Of a stretch of 62,048 nucleotides of DNA, positions 43,496 to 55,510 are shown piece by piece. A program made the translations under genes and the position numbers. The notes beneath the pieces are model-generated. The model did not search any database and had not been told where the DNA came from. It saw only the letters and a list, made by a program, of their open reading frames with translations. This DNA is from Mizuhopecten yessoensis (lineage: Eukaryota), in NCBI RefSeq assembly GCF_002113885.1, contig NW_018408008.1:56731-118778 (forward strand), written 5' to 3'. Every line of letters begins with the position of its first letter. Positions within the stretch are counted from its first letter, which is position 1.

Positions 43496-43797
43496 TCACC
43501 TAGGTGCCAAGATATAATCGGAGAGAGATTTAACGTCCATGTCACATTCCGTCATGGCTAACATAAGCTTCTTTACGGTAGCCTCTTCCCCATCGTCTTG
43601 GATCCATTTCGCCAACAGCGCCTGTATTCTGTCTCCAACTTTCCCATGGTTAACATCAATTATGTCGATTGCTTTGTAATCCATGCCAAGCTCAATGAAG
43701 AGGTTGAAGTAGGATTTCGCACCGATATAATCGGCAACTACATCCTGGAATAGAGTTGATATTGGTCTGTGTAATACTTCAGCGGGTAAGTCCAGAC
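43496..43797 (-). CDS. Roco gene terminal exon: death domain 2
   Basis: VVADYIGAKSYFNLFIELGMDYKAIDII...RIQALLAKWIQDDGEEATVKKLMLAMTEC, the classic death-domain L-x-x-W ... A-T-V-x-x-L pattern. Stop TGA at 43496. Confidence 0.87.
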
Positions 43798-52700: not shown

Positions 52701-55510
52701 TCGTAGAGGGTAATGAAACCCTTGACAGTGTCGTCATCATTGGTTTTCATTTCCTCGTGGTTGTCTAGTTCTCTACTCTCATGTTCATCTTTGTTTTCCG
52801 TTTCCTCGGCATCTTCCACGACCTCGTCCTCGTTTTCCGCGTAGTACCAGTACTCGTCGTCGTCATACTGATATAAAATCTCACCTACAAATTGTTGTTG
52901 TGCCTCAGATAAATCAAGATCAGATGTAGGGGAGATGCATATTCTTTCAATTGCCGTTGTATCATCTTCTGGGGAAAAAAAGAAAAATGGTGCAGATATA
53001 AAACTTTGATTATATGCAGGGACGGGATACTTTGATTACCTATCATTTAGTTATGGTCGAGTAGTAAATGAAGAGATAATGAAAGGGTAGTGTTACATTT
53101 GTAACGATCTTGTTAAACATAGACACGTATATAGGAATACGTATTTAAGCTGTTCTATACTAACCCCTTTATTTGTACTCTACAGCTTTGTAAACAAAAT
53201 CTGGATATGATGGGGTAGATATGAATCTGTGCCAATTATGCACCTGTACTTGCGGTTCCTGCTGATGTATTTCTGTTATCCGGTTTGTCAGTTGTTTGTT
53301 GGGCACTGTAACGTTTGAATATCCTTCTTAAACGTTCTTTTCCTGTTTCCATTTCACCTCCCTCGCCAAGTTTTTGTCGAAAGCCTGTGTTTGGATCCCA
53401 GTCTAAATAGTTTGCAAGAAATTCTACAAGATTTGTTGATCCTGGACCATCAATTGGAAACTCTTCCCGTGACAACTGCTTTCGTAGGCATGTCTTTCCA
53501 GACTTTACATTTCCTATGAAGGTAACTGTGACGTTACAGGTTTGAACTAATTTCTCAGTGATTCCTTTCTTAACTTGATACTGTGCAAGTCGATCTGAAA
53601 ATACAAATATGACATATGAATTAATAGTACAAATATATTCCAATACCTCTTCTTTCTCTTAACAAATATGTTAACTATATATGAGTGTTACTCTAGCAAA
53701 ACTAACGACATATAACCTGCCTCTTGTACAATACTTAACCTCATGTTATAATAACTATAAACGAACCTAAATCAACTGACAACTAAATCATCCCCTCTAC
53801 CTCTGTATCAGTGTATCTCCATGGACAGCCTCTTTAAAGATATCAACTAGTTAAAAAAAAACCAGATCTGATAAAAACATTTCAAAGCATCGGTAAAGCA
53901 CAAAGTCATTATTTATAAACACAATTCACCAAATTCACTTTAGCTGGTAGCAATGTCCCCGGGGTGCTTTCAAAAACGTATTATACTTGAGAAATTATCA
54001 CACCTATACATATCTGCAACTAAACTGTTTTTTTCTCGCTTATTCAATCTATACGATTATCGGTTATCCCCCAATCCTCAACTTTTTCTTATAATGAAAT
54101 TTAACCTTTAACAAAATAAACCACTCAAAGTGTGATGACATCATAAGCTACAATACTGGTATTTGTAATTCTAACTTCTGAATGGTCGAAGTTGCTGAGC
54201 AATGAAATTGCTTTGCAATGTTGTTTTATATGCGAAATTATTATCTTTTAATCAAAAATCAATAAATATGTATCTGTTACATTTAGAGTTATGTGGTACA
54301 TTCCGAAAAAAAAGTACGTGTATTTGTGTTAATAATTGTTGAACTCAAAAAATGTCCTGGGTATTTTTTTAGTATATATATATAGCCAGATCATAGTTAA
54401 TGGTACATGCTGAATATCATATTTGTTTCACCAATATGGAGAAACATCAATATTTTTCAAAGATGCAAAGCAATACCAGTGAACATGAAACGATTAAGTG
54501 TTCATCTTATTGCATTTCAGATTGCAAACATACCACAGTGAGTTATAAATGTAGCAGCAAAGAGCGAAATTTAGTTGAGTGATCTTTAGCGGCACATTCT
54601 TATGACTTCAAGCTTGACGGCAAGGATGGGCGTCATTGTAAATTGACTTATCAACACAAATCTTCAGTTTCCAGCTATTTTTCGGTACGATTTGCTTGCA
54701 ATAACATTACAAAATAACGTAGTTTTGTACATTGCTTGGTGTATGAAGCTAAGATGAACAAAAACAACCACTTATTCTAATGTAGCTAAGCTGCAGTTAG
54801 AATAGGAAATATGCGGCTCAAAATGCAGTATACAAACATATTCTTATCATAATCGATACTTGAACTGATACATGTATAAGTATAAATTTTAATCTATCTT
54901 GATAACATCTGATATTTCATTCGTAAACAAATATAATGTATGTTTTTAGTTGTATATAAAATAATGATACTTATTTCAAGTTCTCAATATAAAGACACCA
55001 TAACTATTATGTAACTTTGAGGCATACTACAGTATTCAATAATTGCACACCGCGGTGTTTTATGCAAATACATATTTTACACCTTAAGTAAAAGTAAAAA
55101 TATGTACCAAAATGCTGGATCACCTCCCGGTATCTACTTTGATTCGGATCATCGTCCAACTTTTCTCTTGCCACATCCATTGGTCGGCGTCCTTTGTAAT
55201 TAACCTGCTGTATAGCGTCAGGACATTTTTCACATATGGACCTCATTATATTTTTCCATGGACGACCCTCTCTTGCCATGTAATGTAGCACATTGTATCC
55301 AAATAGATCCTGCACTGCCAATTCCTCGCCTGTCATCTCGTCGACCAAGTAGCTCGTCACTTGTTGATGATTATTAAATACGGTATGTATAATGGGTGTA
55401 AGACCGTCCTCATCTCTGATTCCTAAAGCCGACCTATTTCGTACGAGGACTTGCACTGTATTCAGGTCCCCACAACTTGCTGCATGGTGAAGAGGTAAGA
55501 TTGCAGACAT
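43496..55510 (-). CDS. Multi-exon Roco-family protein, ANK-Roc-COR-DD-DD (kinase-less, DAPK1-like architecture), ~1046 aa. Exons: 55510-55108, 53594-53244, 52968-52579, 52430-52312, 47912-47560, 47001-46122, 45015-44991, 44763-44446, 43797-43496
   Basis: All 8 introns are GT-AG with compatible phases (1,1,1,0,2,0,1,1). Exon lengths 403+351+390+119+353+880+25+318+302 = 3141 nt, with no internal stop. Motifs: ankyrin (PLHHAASCGDLNTVQVLV, GYNVLHYMA), P-loop GNVKSGKT, G3 LYDFGGE, G4 PIILTGSHLD, COR-like (VPARWIAMEQEL, IILNPNFILDALKCII, YYIVPCML), and two death-domain-like exons. Confidence 0.9.
44446..44763 (-). CDS. Roco gene exon: death domain 1
   Basis: LPDRIPSMKETGRIAKLISGKGYQMFFTELHLPIHILEQI...RATKMLLHVW...FAEIMDAM fits a six-helix death-fold pattern. 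318 nt, phase 1-1. Confidence 0.8.
44842..44902. repeat. Compound (TG)n/(TC)n microsatellite in Roco intron 7
   Basis: Seen directly in the sequence. Confidence 0.9.
44991..45015 (-). CDS. Roco gene 25-nt microexon (RRKRQPHI)
   Basis: ttttaacag|CGTAGGAAACGACAACCTCACATTG|gtaagt. It is required to convert phase 0 to phase 1 between COR and the first death domain. Confidence 0.8.
45060..45975. mobile_element. MITE or foldback element with ~190-bp inverted arms in Roco intron 6
   Basis: gaaagtgatgacgtcatgatatattatgacgtcacac...aaaattgacgcc (45202-45260) is the inverse of ggcgtcaatttt...catgacgtcatcactttc (45801-45860). The arms extend out to acaaatga / tcatttgt. Confidence 0.75.
46122..47001 (-). 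CDS. Roco gene exon: COR domain
   Basis: KLQMTGSMIVV...IILNPNFILDALKCIIT...METLGLLAKP...YYIVPCML...FIPYAIWDKLVATCI. Splice sites cttcag| and |gtaagt; 880 nt. Confidence 0.88.
47560..47912 (-). CDS. Roco gene exon: Roc C-terminus and COR-A start
   Basis: EEEKLEVF...MFPISN...QSEWMKLVPARWIAMEQELLKRK...VRYFLK. Splice sites cttacag| and |gtatgt. Confidence 0.88.
49024..49650. mobile_element. Nested Kolobok-like MITE
   Basis: GGTAGCAGAGTACAGTAGA at the left end, inverse TCTACTGTGCACTGCTACC|TTAA at the right end. The left TSD is degenerate. Confidence 0.55.
50439..51557. mobile_element. Nested Tc1/mariner-superfamily non-autonomous element
   Basis: TA|CAGTTAGAGATACGGCTAAGTATC ... GATACTTAGCCGTAATTCTAACTG|TA, with an internal 29-bp tandem repeat at ~50626-50750. 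Confidence 0.75.
52312..52430 (-). CDS. Roco gene exon: Roc G4 region (not in the ORF track)
   Basis: EGIESWLSSVGTYAVDDKADQNRTPPIILTGSHLDQVSGT matches the Roc W-L-x-S-I ... P-x-I-L-V-G-T-H-x-D pattern. Splice sites taacag| and |gtgagt. Confidence 0.88.
52579..52968 (-). CDS. Roco gene exon: acidic insert plus Roc G3 region
   Basis: EDDTTAIER...DDDEYWYYAENEDEVVEDAEE...KGFITLYDFGGETIFYNSHHCFMSGDMVFILVFDV. Splice sites ttttttccccag| and |gttgtt; 390 nt. Confidence 0.88.
53244..53594 (-). CDS. Roco gene exon: Roc N-terminus with P-loop (G1) and switch I
   Basis: VTVTFIGNVKSGKTCLRKQL...GPGSTNLVEF. Splice sites ttttcag| and |gtgcat; 351 nt, phase 1-1. Confidence 0.9.

What the first reader, a model, noticed from the sequence alone, without database searches (positions are those of the whole stretch)
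43496..55510. Intact kinase-less Roco gene: ANK sensor - Roc/COR switch - tandem death domains (candidate invertebrate immune receptor)
Seen: a 9-exon, frame-consistent 1046-aa gene with an intact P-loop, sitting in otherwise decayed repeat DNA. Known: DAPK1 is kinase-ANK-Roc-COR-DD, Roco G-domains cycle through nucleotide-dependent dimerisation, death domains nucleate homotypic signalling filaments, and LRR-Roco genes of brown algae have been proposed as pathogen receptors. Inference: with no kinase and two C-terminal DDs, this protein has sensor-NTPase switch-effector logic like an NLR in reverse order, using a GTPase instead of NACHT. It may belong to a lineage-expanded, largely uncharacterised innate-immune or cell-death receptor family.
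Basis: partly seen in the sequence, partly recalled or inferred. Interest (0 to 1): 0.78.

Follow-up and report, generated by a model that had tools for sequence, protein, structure and literature searches.

The report
Kinase-less scallop Roco death-domain gene
This is a real, intact Yesso scallop gene for a GTPase-switch protein (ankyrin repeats, Roc-COR, two death domains, no kinase); it is one of at least 60 related copies in the genome and its domain make-up resembles intracellular immune or cell-death receptors, but its function and expression were not tested here.

Summary
On the minus strand, 55510 to 43496, nine GT-AG exons give a 3141-nt reading frame of 1046 aa. This equals RefSeq XP_021364998.1, "uncharacterized protein LOC110457875 isoform X1", of Mizuhopecten yessoensis.

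Domains:
- **Ankyrin:** about four repeats (Pfam).
- **Roc GTPase:** G1, G3 and G4 motifs are intact, with a family-wide insert of about 120 aa.
- **COR-A and COR-B:** the family profile hits LRRK2 at 9e-34, and the predicted fold matches C. tepidum RocCOR and LRRK1.
- **Two death folds:** RAIDD DD at Z 13.9 and TRADD DD at Z 12.0.

No kinase was found. There is none in the 6.5 kb upstream, and orthologue and paralogue models start at the same Met.

The gene belongs to a large bivalve family. At least 62 mostly stop-free COR exons occur in this genome, about 21 loci have COR-DD-DD, and about 11 to 13 have the full architecture. Other members carry HEPN, TIR or CARD domains instead.

The immune-receptor reading remains inference. 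Roco fusions with TIR or Death domains were already noted in Aplysia and sea anemones, and this scan already reported a paralogue (s1-514806). I rate it a new variant of a known kind, of moderate interest.

The parts
55108..55510 (-). Exon 1: start codon (55510-55508) and about four ankyrin repeats (aa 1-135)
   Evidence: Pfam Ank_2 at 4.6e-12 on the exon. The fold matches DARPins and designed ankyrins, TMt 0.64-0.76. Paralogue and orthologue proteins start at the equivalent Met. An acceptor-like ttacag ends at 55523, so a 5' UTR exon upstream is possible.
53244..53594 (-). Exon 2: Roc beta1, P-loop G1 (GNVKSGKT, 53514-53491), switch I Thr188, and the start of the insert
   Evidence: G167, K168 and T188 are nearly invariant across 44 family members. 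This is the best-conserved part between orthologues, 85-86%.
52579..52968 (-). Exon 3: acidic, disordered part of the Roc insert, then beta3 and G3 DFGG (52702-52691). It has a tandem acceptor (AG at 52970-52969 and 52967-52966) and an internal alternative donor (GT at 52884-52883).
   Evidence: Pfam Roc at 6.9e-5 on the exon. D341 and G344 are invariant. pLDDT is below 50 at aa 240-257 and 287-329. Isoforms X2 and X3 are explained.
52312..52430 (-). Exon 4: Roc beta5 and G4 motif SHLD (52338-52327), the THxD type found in LRRK2
   Evidence: G412 and D416 are nearly invariant.
47560..47912 (-). Exon 5: end of Roc and first part of COR-A (aa 422-539)
   Evidence: On the full protein, Pfam COR-A covers aa 491-623 (22.5 bits, below the cut-off of 35.3). 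The family profile aligns positions 328-569 to LRRK2 1386-1613 at 9e-34.
46122..47001 (-). Exon 6 (880 nt): rest of COR-A plus the alpha/beta COR-B (aa 539-832)
   Evidence: There is no Pfam or PDB sequence hit for the exon alone. The fold matches the C. tepidum COR domain 3dpt (TMt 0.63) and RocCOR 3dpu (TMt 0.62). The exon has 62 six-frame homologues in the same genome.
44991..45015 (-). Exon 7: 25-nt microexon encoding a basic linker (aa 833-841)
   Evidence: It has GT-AG borders and keeps the frame. It is present in the RefSeq protein. pLDDT is low at aa 832-837.
44446..44763 (-). Exon 8: death domain 1 (aa 841-947)
   Evidence: Pfam Death reaches only 0.081. The family profile hits the CRADD DD at 8e-10. 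The fold matches the TRADD DD at Z 12.0, rmsd 2.4, 94 residues aligned.
43496..43797 (-). Exon 9: death domain 2 (aa 947-1046) and the stop codon (43498-43496)
   Evidence: Pfam Death at 4.4e-8 on the exon, and 40.3 bits on the protein. The fold matches the RAIDD DD at Z 13.9, rmsd 1.7, 90 of 91 residues, and the RIPK1 DD at Z 12.8.

Best explanation
Shown: window 43496-55510 (minus strand) is the intact gene LOC110457875 of the Yesso scallop. It encodes a 1046-aa kinase-less Roco protein with these parts:
- about four ankyrin repeats;
- a Roc GTPase with intact G1, G3 and G4 motifs, split by an insert of about 120 aa that is partly acidic and disordered, lying between beta2 and beta3;
- COR-A and COR-B;
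- a basic microexon linker;
- two death domains predicted to pack into one rigid unit.

It is one of at least 60 paralogous Roc-COR loci in this genome. The family is found across bivalves, and its ends are swapped among ANK, HEPN, TIR, CARD and Death modules.

Inferred: as in studied Roco proteins, GTP binding and hydrolysis in Roc, relayed through COR, would change the oligomeric state or conformation. C. tepidum Roco, for example, is dimeric when nucleotide-free and monomeric with GTP. Here the output would not be a kinase. It would be exposure or clustering of the tandem death domains, which would nucleate homotypic death-domain assemblies with adaptor partners of the MyD88, IRAK, FADD, TRADD or RIPK type. 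That would feed NF-kB or caspase/cell-death pathways. The ankyrin repeats would bind the upstream partner. The family pattern makes an innate-immune or stress/cell-death role the most likely one.
For: - **Gene model:**; identity with RefSeq proteins.
- **Domains by sequence:** Ank_2 39.1, Roc 34.7 and Death 40.3 bits are all above the Pfam cut-offs on the full protein. Across 44 relatives, Roc is found in 44 and COR-A in 41. The family profile hits LRRK2 at 9e-34, C. tepidum Roco at 5e-20, LRRK1 at 3.5e-13, the CRADD DD at 8e-10 and the RIPK1 DD at 2e-6.
- **Fold:** the full-length model has pLDDT 83.3 and pTM 0.77. Its best matches are LRRK1, C. tepidum RocCOR, M. barkeri Roco2 and the C. tepidum COR domain. 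The tandem-DD model has pLDDT 91 and pTM 0.87, with the RAIDD DD at Z 13.9 and the TRADD DD at Z 12.0.
- **GTPase motifs:** conserved in the family.
- **Expansion:** 62 COR-exon matches, 61 of them without stops. DD2, DD1, P-loop and ANK exons lie next to them.
- **Domain shuffling:** HEPN_DZIP3 in 8 members, plus TIR, CARD and WWE; Roc-COR-CARD in a unionid mussel.
- **Mechanism by analogy:** the Roco review PMC6337361.
Against: - No expression, induction or biochemical data were obtained.
- COR-A in this particular protein scores below Pfam's cut-off (22.5 against 35.3 bits).
- The residue after DFGG is Glu, and the large insert in Roc is unprecedented among solved Rocos, so GTPase kinetics may be unusual or absent.
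- The ANK module is short and is no more variable than the death domains between paralogues.
- Full-length orthologues at 67-70% identity in Ylistrum and Pecten fit a stable cellular role as well as an immune one.
Confidence: 0.6

Rival explanations
1. It is a non-immune cytoplasmic scaffold or regulator, for example of cytoskeleton or membrane traffic, developmental apoptosis or stress. It would use Roc-COR and death domains much as DAPK1 or ankyrins use theirs, with no receptor-like sensing.
For: One-to-one-looking orthologues at 67-70% identity over the full length in two other scallop genera. The ANK module is short and not hypervariable. The closest solved death-domain folds include those of ankyrins. 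DAPK1 itself is a cell-death and autophagy regulator, not a pathogen sensor (PMC6337361).
Against: The family is expanded to at least 60 loci, with tandem clusters (for example five genes on contig C1340) and swapping with TIR, CARD and HEPN modules. This pattern is typical of conflict and immune gene families.
Confidence: 0.25
2. The Roc domain is a degenerate, non-cycling module and the protein is a constitutive death-domain adaptor. The G domain would serve only as a structural or dimerisation core.
For: There is an insert of about 120 aa in the interswitch region. Glu replaces Gln/Arg after DxxG. A predicted isoform, X3, removes G3 altogether. MFHAS1 and the isolated LRRK2 Roc domain have very low intrinsic GTPase activity.
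Against: The P-loop Gly/Lys, switch I Thr, DxxG and the G4 Asp are invariant or nearly invariant in 44 diverged relatives. That argues for selection on nucleotide binding. The G1 region is the best-conserved part between orthologues.
Confidence: 0.1
3. It is a plain DAPK1 orthologue whose kinase and calmodulin-binding exons lie further upstream and were missed.
For: An acceptor-like site sits 13 nt upstream of the ATG, and the frame stays open to 55534. The contig beyond the window reads mostly N and could not be examined.
Against: There are no kinase motifs and no Pfam hits in the 6.5 kb upstream. RefSeq models of this gene, its Ylistrum orthologue and several paralogues start at the equivalent Met. 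Pkinase is not among the families found in two or more of 44 relatives. Four relatives that are named 'kinase' have no kinase domain. DAPK1 has one death domain, and this protein has two.
Confidence: 0.03
4. It is an unexpressed or recently dead gene copy that merely looks intact.
Against: A 3141-nt frame across nine exons has no stop and canonical splice sites. All catalytic motifs are conserved. Orthologues are conserved over the full length. RefSeq lists three isoforms. From my own knowledge, such isoforms usually rest on transcript alignments; this was not verified here.
Confidence: 0.04

Closest known systems
[quoted passage not shown]
   Same: The order ankyrin repeats, Roc, COR, C-terminal death domain. 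It has no LRR and is metazoan-only, with a link to cell-death signalling (PMC6337361).
   Different: It has no kinase and no calmodulin-regulatory segment. It has about 4 ankyrin repeats instead of 8-10 (the DAPK1 number is from my own knowledge). It has two death domains instead of one, and an insert of about 120 aa inside Roc. It is one of dozens of paralogues rather than a single conserved gene. Whether it descends from DAPK1 was not tested.
LRRK1/LRRK2 and prokaryotic Roco proteins (C. tepidum Roco, M. barkeri Roco2)
   Same: The Roc-COR-A-COR-B core is homologous by profile (LRRK2 9e-34, C. tepidum Roco 5e-20) and by predicted fold (8e05, 3dpu, 4wnr, 3dpt). The G4 motif is of the THxD type.
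   Different: It has no LRR, kinase or WD40. Its output module is a pair of death folds. Roc carries a large interswitch insert.
Roco fusions with TIR or Death domains noted in invertebrate immunome surveys (Aplysia TLR/MyD88-like ROCO proteins, PMC9334734; sea-anemone LRR-Roc-COR-TIR 'NG1' and kinase-DD-TIR-Roc/COR 'NG3', PMC5094078)
   Same: A Roc-COR core is joined to immune-type signalling domains in marine invertebrates. These were proposed, from sequence only, as a GTPase-based immune signalling route.
   Different: Those have LRR, TIR, Mbt or EF-hand architectures. The ANK-RocCOR-DD-DD arrangement and the scale of the bivalve expansion are not described in the papers I could search.
NLR/STAND receptors, brown-algal LRR-ROCO candidates (PMC3341825, PMC11378527) and bacterial AP-GTPase/COR conflict systems (PMC8195603)
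   Same: The logic of repeat module, NTPase switch, then variable effector or adaptor, together with family expansion and domain shuffling.
   Different: The switch is a Ras-like GTPase, not a NACHT or NB-ARC ATPase. The repeat module is a short ANK stack, not long, fast-evolving LRRs. This is an analogy of design, not family membership.

Membership tests
Roco (Roc-COR) GTPases | Ras-like Roc G domain with nucleotide-binding motifs | tested here: met
   Pfam Roc scores 34.7 bits against a cut-off of 27 on P0151. G1 is GNVKSGKT, with Thr188, G3 DFGG and G4 SHLD, all conserved in 44 relatives. The LRRK2 Roc domain is hit at about 1e-27 by the family profile.
Roco (Roc-COR) GTPases | COR-A directly after Roc | tested here: met
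   This protein scores only 22.5 bits, below the cut-off of 35.3 (E 1.1e-4). However, 41 of 44 relatives match at E 1e-3 or better, and several exceed the cut-off. The profile alignment runs from Roc into the COR of LRRK2 (1386-1613) at 9e-34. The fold matches M. barkeri RocCORdeltaC 4wnr with TMt 0.71.
Roco (Roc-COR) GTPases | COR-B (C-terminal alpha/beta half of COR, the dimerisation device) | tested here: met
   This rests on the predicted fold only: C. tepidum COR 3dpt TMt 0.63 and RocCOR 3dpu TMt 0.62. There is no Pfam COR-B hit and no PDB sequence hit for exon 6 alone. Dimerisation itself cannot be tested here.
DAPK1 family | N-terminal Ca2+/calmodulin-regulated Ser/Thr kinase domain | tested here: not met
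   There is no Pkinase hit in the protein. There are no kinase motifs or Pfam hits in the 6.5 kb upstream. Orthologue and paralogue proteins start at the same Met. DNA further upstream reads N and was left alone.
DAPK1 family | ANK repeats, Roc-COR, and a single C-terminal death domain | tested here: inconclusive
   The order of ANK, Roc-COR and DD is shared, but there are two death domains and about 4 repeats. No tree including DAPK1 sequences was built, because no DAPK1 Roc-COR sequence was available by reference.
Death domain superfamily (DD subfamily) | Six-helix death fold with DD-type sequence signature | tested here: met
   DD2: Pfam Death 40.3 bits (cut-off 22.6), and RAIDD DD at Z 13.9, rmsd 1.7. 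DD1: Pfam only 0.081 on the exon, but the profile hits the CRADD DD at 8e-10 and the fold matches the TRADD DD at Z 12.0, rmsd 2.4.
NLR / STAND receptors | NACHT or NB-ARC STAND ATPase core | tested here: not met
   There is no such Pfam hit, and the NTPase is a Ras-like Roc domain. The similarity is one of design only.

The most novel reading that the evidence does not exclude
Bivalves may run a large, so far unstudied class of intracellular receptors or adaptors. In these, a Roco GTPase, rather than a NACHT ATPase, would gate the assembly of death-fold (DD, CARD), TIR or HEPN effector modules. This gene would be one ANK-sensing, tandem-DD-nucleating member, and the family-specific insert in Roc would be its regulatory or partner-binding element.
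Probability: 0.3. Interest if true: 0.7.

Novelty: new variant of a known kind. Interest (0 to 1): 0.45.

Why it matters
Roco GTPases are studied almost entirely through LRRK2 (Parkinson's disease) and DAPK1, where the output is a kinase. This is a natural Roco whose only plausible output is a pair of death domains, and it is multiplied to dozens of copies with swapped end modules. If the inferred mechanism holds, it would offer a simple read-out (death-domain assembly) for how Roc-COR converts nucleotide state into signalling. It would also add a GTPase-based branch to the expanded innate-immune and cell-death toolkit of bivalves, animals that rely on innate defence and are farmed at large scale. 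The practical caveats are that the gene is already in RefSeq as an uncharacterised protein, that related fusions have been noted in other invertebrates, and that the function is unproven.

Tried and rejected
- **Single exons 5 and 6:** Pfam and PDB sequence searches found nothing. For a while this left open that the middle was not COR. Full-length database proteins, the family profile and the fold settled it.
- **RNA evidence:** A word search with aa 500-900 for transcript-derived fragments found only a Pecten paralogue.
- **Upstream kinase:** a motif scan and Pfam on all minus-strand open segments of 50 aa or more in 55535-62048 were negative.
- **Six-frame Pfam COR-A search of the genome:** it gave only 23 hits. 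It is much less sensitive than the exon-6 protein query, so it is not used as a count.
- **Earlier scan notes by place:** none.
- **Literature:** searches for the locus and accession names, and for Roco plus scallop, gave nothing relevant.
- **Not attempted:**
  - dN/dS and presence/absence tests, because no coding DNA of the orthologues and no population data were reachable;
  - a tree with DAPK1, LRRK and MFHAS1, because no reference sequences were at hand.
- **Joined model:** my own spliced model was not sent to any search tool. Exons were searched by reference. The joined translation was made only inside scripts, to check frame and length and to compare with the database protein. All full-length searches used the database proteins P0001 and P0151.
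Full report
**1. Observation**

I read the splice sites in the sequence and obtained nine exons, given as high to low window coordinates:

| Exon | Coordinates |
|---|---|
| 1 | 55510-55108 |
| 2 | 53594-53244 |
| 3 | 52968-52579 |
| 4 | 52430-52312 |
| 5 | 47912-47560 |
| 6 | 47001-46122 |
| 7 | 45015-44991 |
| 8 | 44763-44446 |
| 9 | 43797-43496 |

All eight introns are GT-AG and all phases fit. 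The frame is 3141 nt, which is 1046 codons plus a stop.

Exons were searched one by one by reference. The joined translation was made only inside scripts, to check frame and length and to compare it with a database protein.

**2. Identity of the gene**

I searched exon 6 (293 aa) against 1.84 billion representative proteins. Pfam and PDB sequence searches had left this exon unexplained. The search returned P0001 (1045 aa), which is 100% identical over aa 539-831.

P0001 differs from my model by a single residue at position 252. This comes from a tandem acceptor (cag|aag) at the start of exon 3. The cluster look-up names the proteins:
- P0001 is XP_021364999.1, isoform X2.
- P0151 is XP_021364998.1, isoform X1, 1046 aa.
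- Both belong to "uncharacterized protein LOC110457875" of Mizuhopecten yessoensis.

A third isoform, X3 (P0159, 944 aa), lacks aa 280-381. The sequence shows an in-phase alternative donor (GT at 52884-52883) inside exon 3 that would produce it. That isoform would lose beta3, the DFGG motif and the following elements. It is a prediction only.

**3. Domains**

Exon by exon, Pfam gave the following:

| Exon | Pfam result |
|---|---|
| 1 | Ank_2 4.6e-12 |
| 2 and 3 | Roc 0.094 and 6.9e-5 |
| 4 to 6 | nothing |
| 8 | Death 0.081 |
| 9 | Death 4.4e-8 |

On the full database protein:

| Family | Bits | Pfam cut-off |
|---|---|---|
| Death | 40.3 | 22.6 |
| Ank_2 | 39.1 | 27.3 |
| Roc | 34.7 | 27 |
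| COR-A | 22.5 | 35.3 (not reached) |

The weak COR-A score is made good at family level:
- In an alignment of 44 full-length relatives (A1), Roc is found in 44 and COR-A in 41.
- A profile of A1 hits LRRK2 at 9e-34 across Roc into COR (LRRK2 1386-1613). It hits C. tepidum Roco and M. barkeri Roco2 at 5e-20, and LRRK1 at 3.5e-13.
- The same profile hits the CRADD death domain at 8e-10 in the DD1 region, and the RIPK1 death domain at 2e-6 in the DD2 region.

The G motifs are intact: G1 GNVKSGKT, Thr188, G3 DFGG, and G4 SHLD, which is the THxD type. The corresponding columns are invariant or nearly so in the 44 relatives.

**4. Fold**

AlphaFold2 on P0151 with A1 as the alignment gave mean pLDDT 83.3 and pTM 0.77. 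Only the acidic stretches (aa 240-257, 287-329) and the microexon linker (832-837) had low confidence.

Foldseek against the PDB gave these matches:

| Match | Score |
|---|---|
| LRRK1 (8e05) | E 6e-14 |
| C. tepidum RocCOR (3dpu) | TM by target 0.62 |
| C. tepidum LRR-Roc-COR (6hlu) | listed among top hits |
| LRRK2 | many entries |
| M. barkeri RocCORdeltaC (4wnr) | TM by target 0.71 |
| C. tepidum COR domain alone (3dpt) | TM by target 0.63 |
| Designed ankyrins, N-terminus | TM by target 0.64-0.76 |

Exon 6 therefore encodes the rest of COR-A plus COR-B.

A separate model of aa 838-1046 had pLDDT 91 and pTM 0.87. This suggests the two domains pack in a fixed way. A second-look alignment shows:
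- DD2 (aa 953-1043) matches the RAIDD DD at Z 13.9, rmsd 1.7, 90 of 91 residues, and the RIPK1 DD at Z 12.8.
- DD1 (aa 840-940) matches the TRADD DD at Z 12.0, rmsd 2.4, 94 residues.

Both C-terminal exons therefore model as death folds.

One feature is not seen in the solved Rocos. An insert of about 120 aa (roughly aa 206-326: helices, then an acidic disordered stretch) lies between beta2 and beta3 of Roc. The alignment shows it is family-wide. It is the least conserved part: 52-53% between orthologues and about 19% to a paralogue.

**5. No kinase**

- The protein has no Pkinase hit.
- The 6.5 kb upstream within the window has no kinase motifs. There is no Pfam hit in any minus-strand open segment of 50 aa or more, apart from a faint Tc3 transposase HTH.
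- The contig beyond the window reads mostly N (27,211 of the 36,538 bases scanned upstream of the ATG).
- Independent gene models start at the equivalent Met, just before the first ankyrin repeat: the Ylistrum orthologue and paralogues P0162 and P0009.
- Four relatives named "non-specific serine/threonine protein kinase" or "roco6" have no kinase domain either. Those names appear to be transferred from Roco kinases.
- An acceptor-like site ends at 55523, 13 nt before the ATG. It may mark a 5' UTR exon, and this remains open.

**6. Family**

Six-frame searches of the same genome gave these counts:

| Query | Matches |
|---|---|
| Exon 6 | 62 (61 without stops; 16 at 43-49% identity) |
| DD2 | 38 |
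| DD1 | 25 |
| P-loop exon | 23 |
| ANK exon | 40 |

By comparing coordinates by eye, I estimate:
- about 21 loci have COR followed by DD1 and DD2;
- about 12 more have COR plus one detectable DD;
- about 11 to 13 have ANK, P-loop, COR, DD1 and DD2 in order.

There are tandem clusters, for example five genes on C1340 and others on C1634 and C4076. These are lower bounds and are not curated gene counts.

Across species, 223 representative proteins match exon 6 at E 1e-3 or better. Named ones come from scallops (Pecten, Argopecten, Ylistrum), unionid mussels (Sinanodonta, Potamilus) and Mercenaria.

End modules vary among the 44 aligned relatives:
- Death in 18;
- ANK in 11;
- HEPN_DZIP3 in 8;
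- single cases of TIR, CARD, WWE, MIB_HERC2, VWA, SH2/SH3 and a trypsin-like domain.

The protein atlas lists several mollusc clusters of Roc/COR-A with Death in 56-63% of members, and a sponge cluster with CARD. That result is only a lead.

This gene has full-length orthologues: Ylistrum balloti at 67% identity and 1049 aa, and Pecten maximus at 70%.

**7. Mechanism**

Shown: a Roco core with motifs under conservation, an ankyrin module in front, and two death folds behind.

Inferred from studied Roco proteins (PMC6337361): nucleotide state is relayed from the Roc switch regions through COR. It changes oligomerisation; C. tepidum Roco is dimeric when nucleotide-free and monomeric with GTP. 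In DAPK1, GTP binding regulates the kinase.

With no kinase here, the only evident output is the tandem death domain. I therefore propose nucleotide-gated exposure or clustering of DD1-DD2, which would seed homotypic death-domain assemblies with adaptor partners. Upstream input would come through the ankyrin repeats, and perhaps through the Roc insert.

The expansion and domain shuffling favour an immune or cell-death role. The stable orthologues, the short ANK module and its ordinary variability keep a non-immune scaffold role alive.

**8. Comparison with what is known, and novelty**

The Roco review sorts the family into three topologies:
- LRR-RocCOR;
- LRR-RocCOR-kinase;
- DAPK1 (kinase-ANK-RocCOR-DD).

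ANK-RocCOR-DD-DD without LRR or kinase fits none of these. It is closest to DAPK1 minus its kinase.

The general idea is not new. [quoted passage not shown] Sea anemones have LRR-Roc-COR-TIR and kinase-DD-TIR-Roc/COR genes (PMC5094078). Brown-algal LRR-ROCOs and bacterial AP-GTPase/COR conflict systems have been likened to NLRs (PMC3341825, PMC11378527, PMC8195603).

I found no paper on the scallop or bivalve family, or on this locus. This scan has already reported a paralogue on another piece of the same genome with the same reading (s1-514806).

**Verdict:** a real gene, correctly read. It is a new variant of a known kind, its function is open, and its interest is moderate.

Noticed in passing
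window 52883-52886 and 52966-52971 (exon 3): There are two alternative splice features. A tandem acceptor (cag|aag) explains RefSeq isoforms X1 and X2, which differ by one residue. An in-phase internal donor (GT at 52884-52883) explains isoform X3, which lacks aa 280-381 and so loses the DFGG switch II motif. That would be a GTPase-dead form, if it exists.
   Followed up: partly
window 48043-48161 and 52093-52156 (both ends of the 4.4-kb intron 4): Related arrays with 11/33-bp periodicity sit in direct orientation near each end of intron 4. They give ORF-like 'RKRYANATQ'-type translations. They may be the ends of an inserted element; the origin is unknown.
   Followed up: partly
window 37447-38996 and 39832-41109; 19798-20725 and 6350-6743; 15147-15626: Satellite-like tandem arrays (units of 181 bp, 54-55 bp and 75 bp) fill much of the DNA downstream of the gene. 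Ten other ORFs of 100 aa or more in the window have no Pfam hit.
   Followed up: partly
window 60346-60507 (-): A faint match to the Tc3 transposase HTH (E 0.017, below the cut-off). It is probably a decayed Tc1/mariner remnant upstream of the gene.
   Followed up: no
P0018, P0041, P0047, P0165 (paralogues and relatives): Public names such as 'non-specific serine/threonine protein kinase' and 'serine/threonine-protein kinase roco6' are attached to family members that have no Pfam kinase domain (they have Roc, COR-A and Death or CARD only). The names are probably transferred from Roco kinases.
   Followed up: yes
P0006 and seven other relatives in alignment A1: Eight of 44 relatives carry an N-terminal HEPN_DZIP3 domain (up to 3.5e-46) in place of ankyrin repeats. 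Single members carry TIR_2, CARD, WWE, MIB_HERC2, VWA, SH2/SH3 or a trypsin-like domain.
   Followed up: partly
G000:C1340:65000-257000: A tandem cluster of at least five same-strand paralogues. COR exons are at 68766, 103766, 126662, 196425 and 254939, each with DD exons just downstream.
   Followed up: partly
L013-L015 (G000:C4681:118779-148778): The contig upstream of the window reads almost entirely N (27,211 of the 36,538 bases scanned from window 55511 onward).
   Followed up: no
window 44857-44903 (intron 7): A (GA)n/(CA)n-type microsatellite lies between the 25-nt microexon and the DD1 exon.
   Followed up: no
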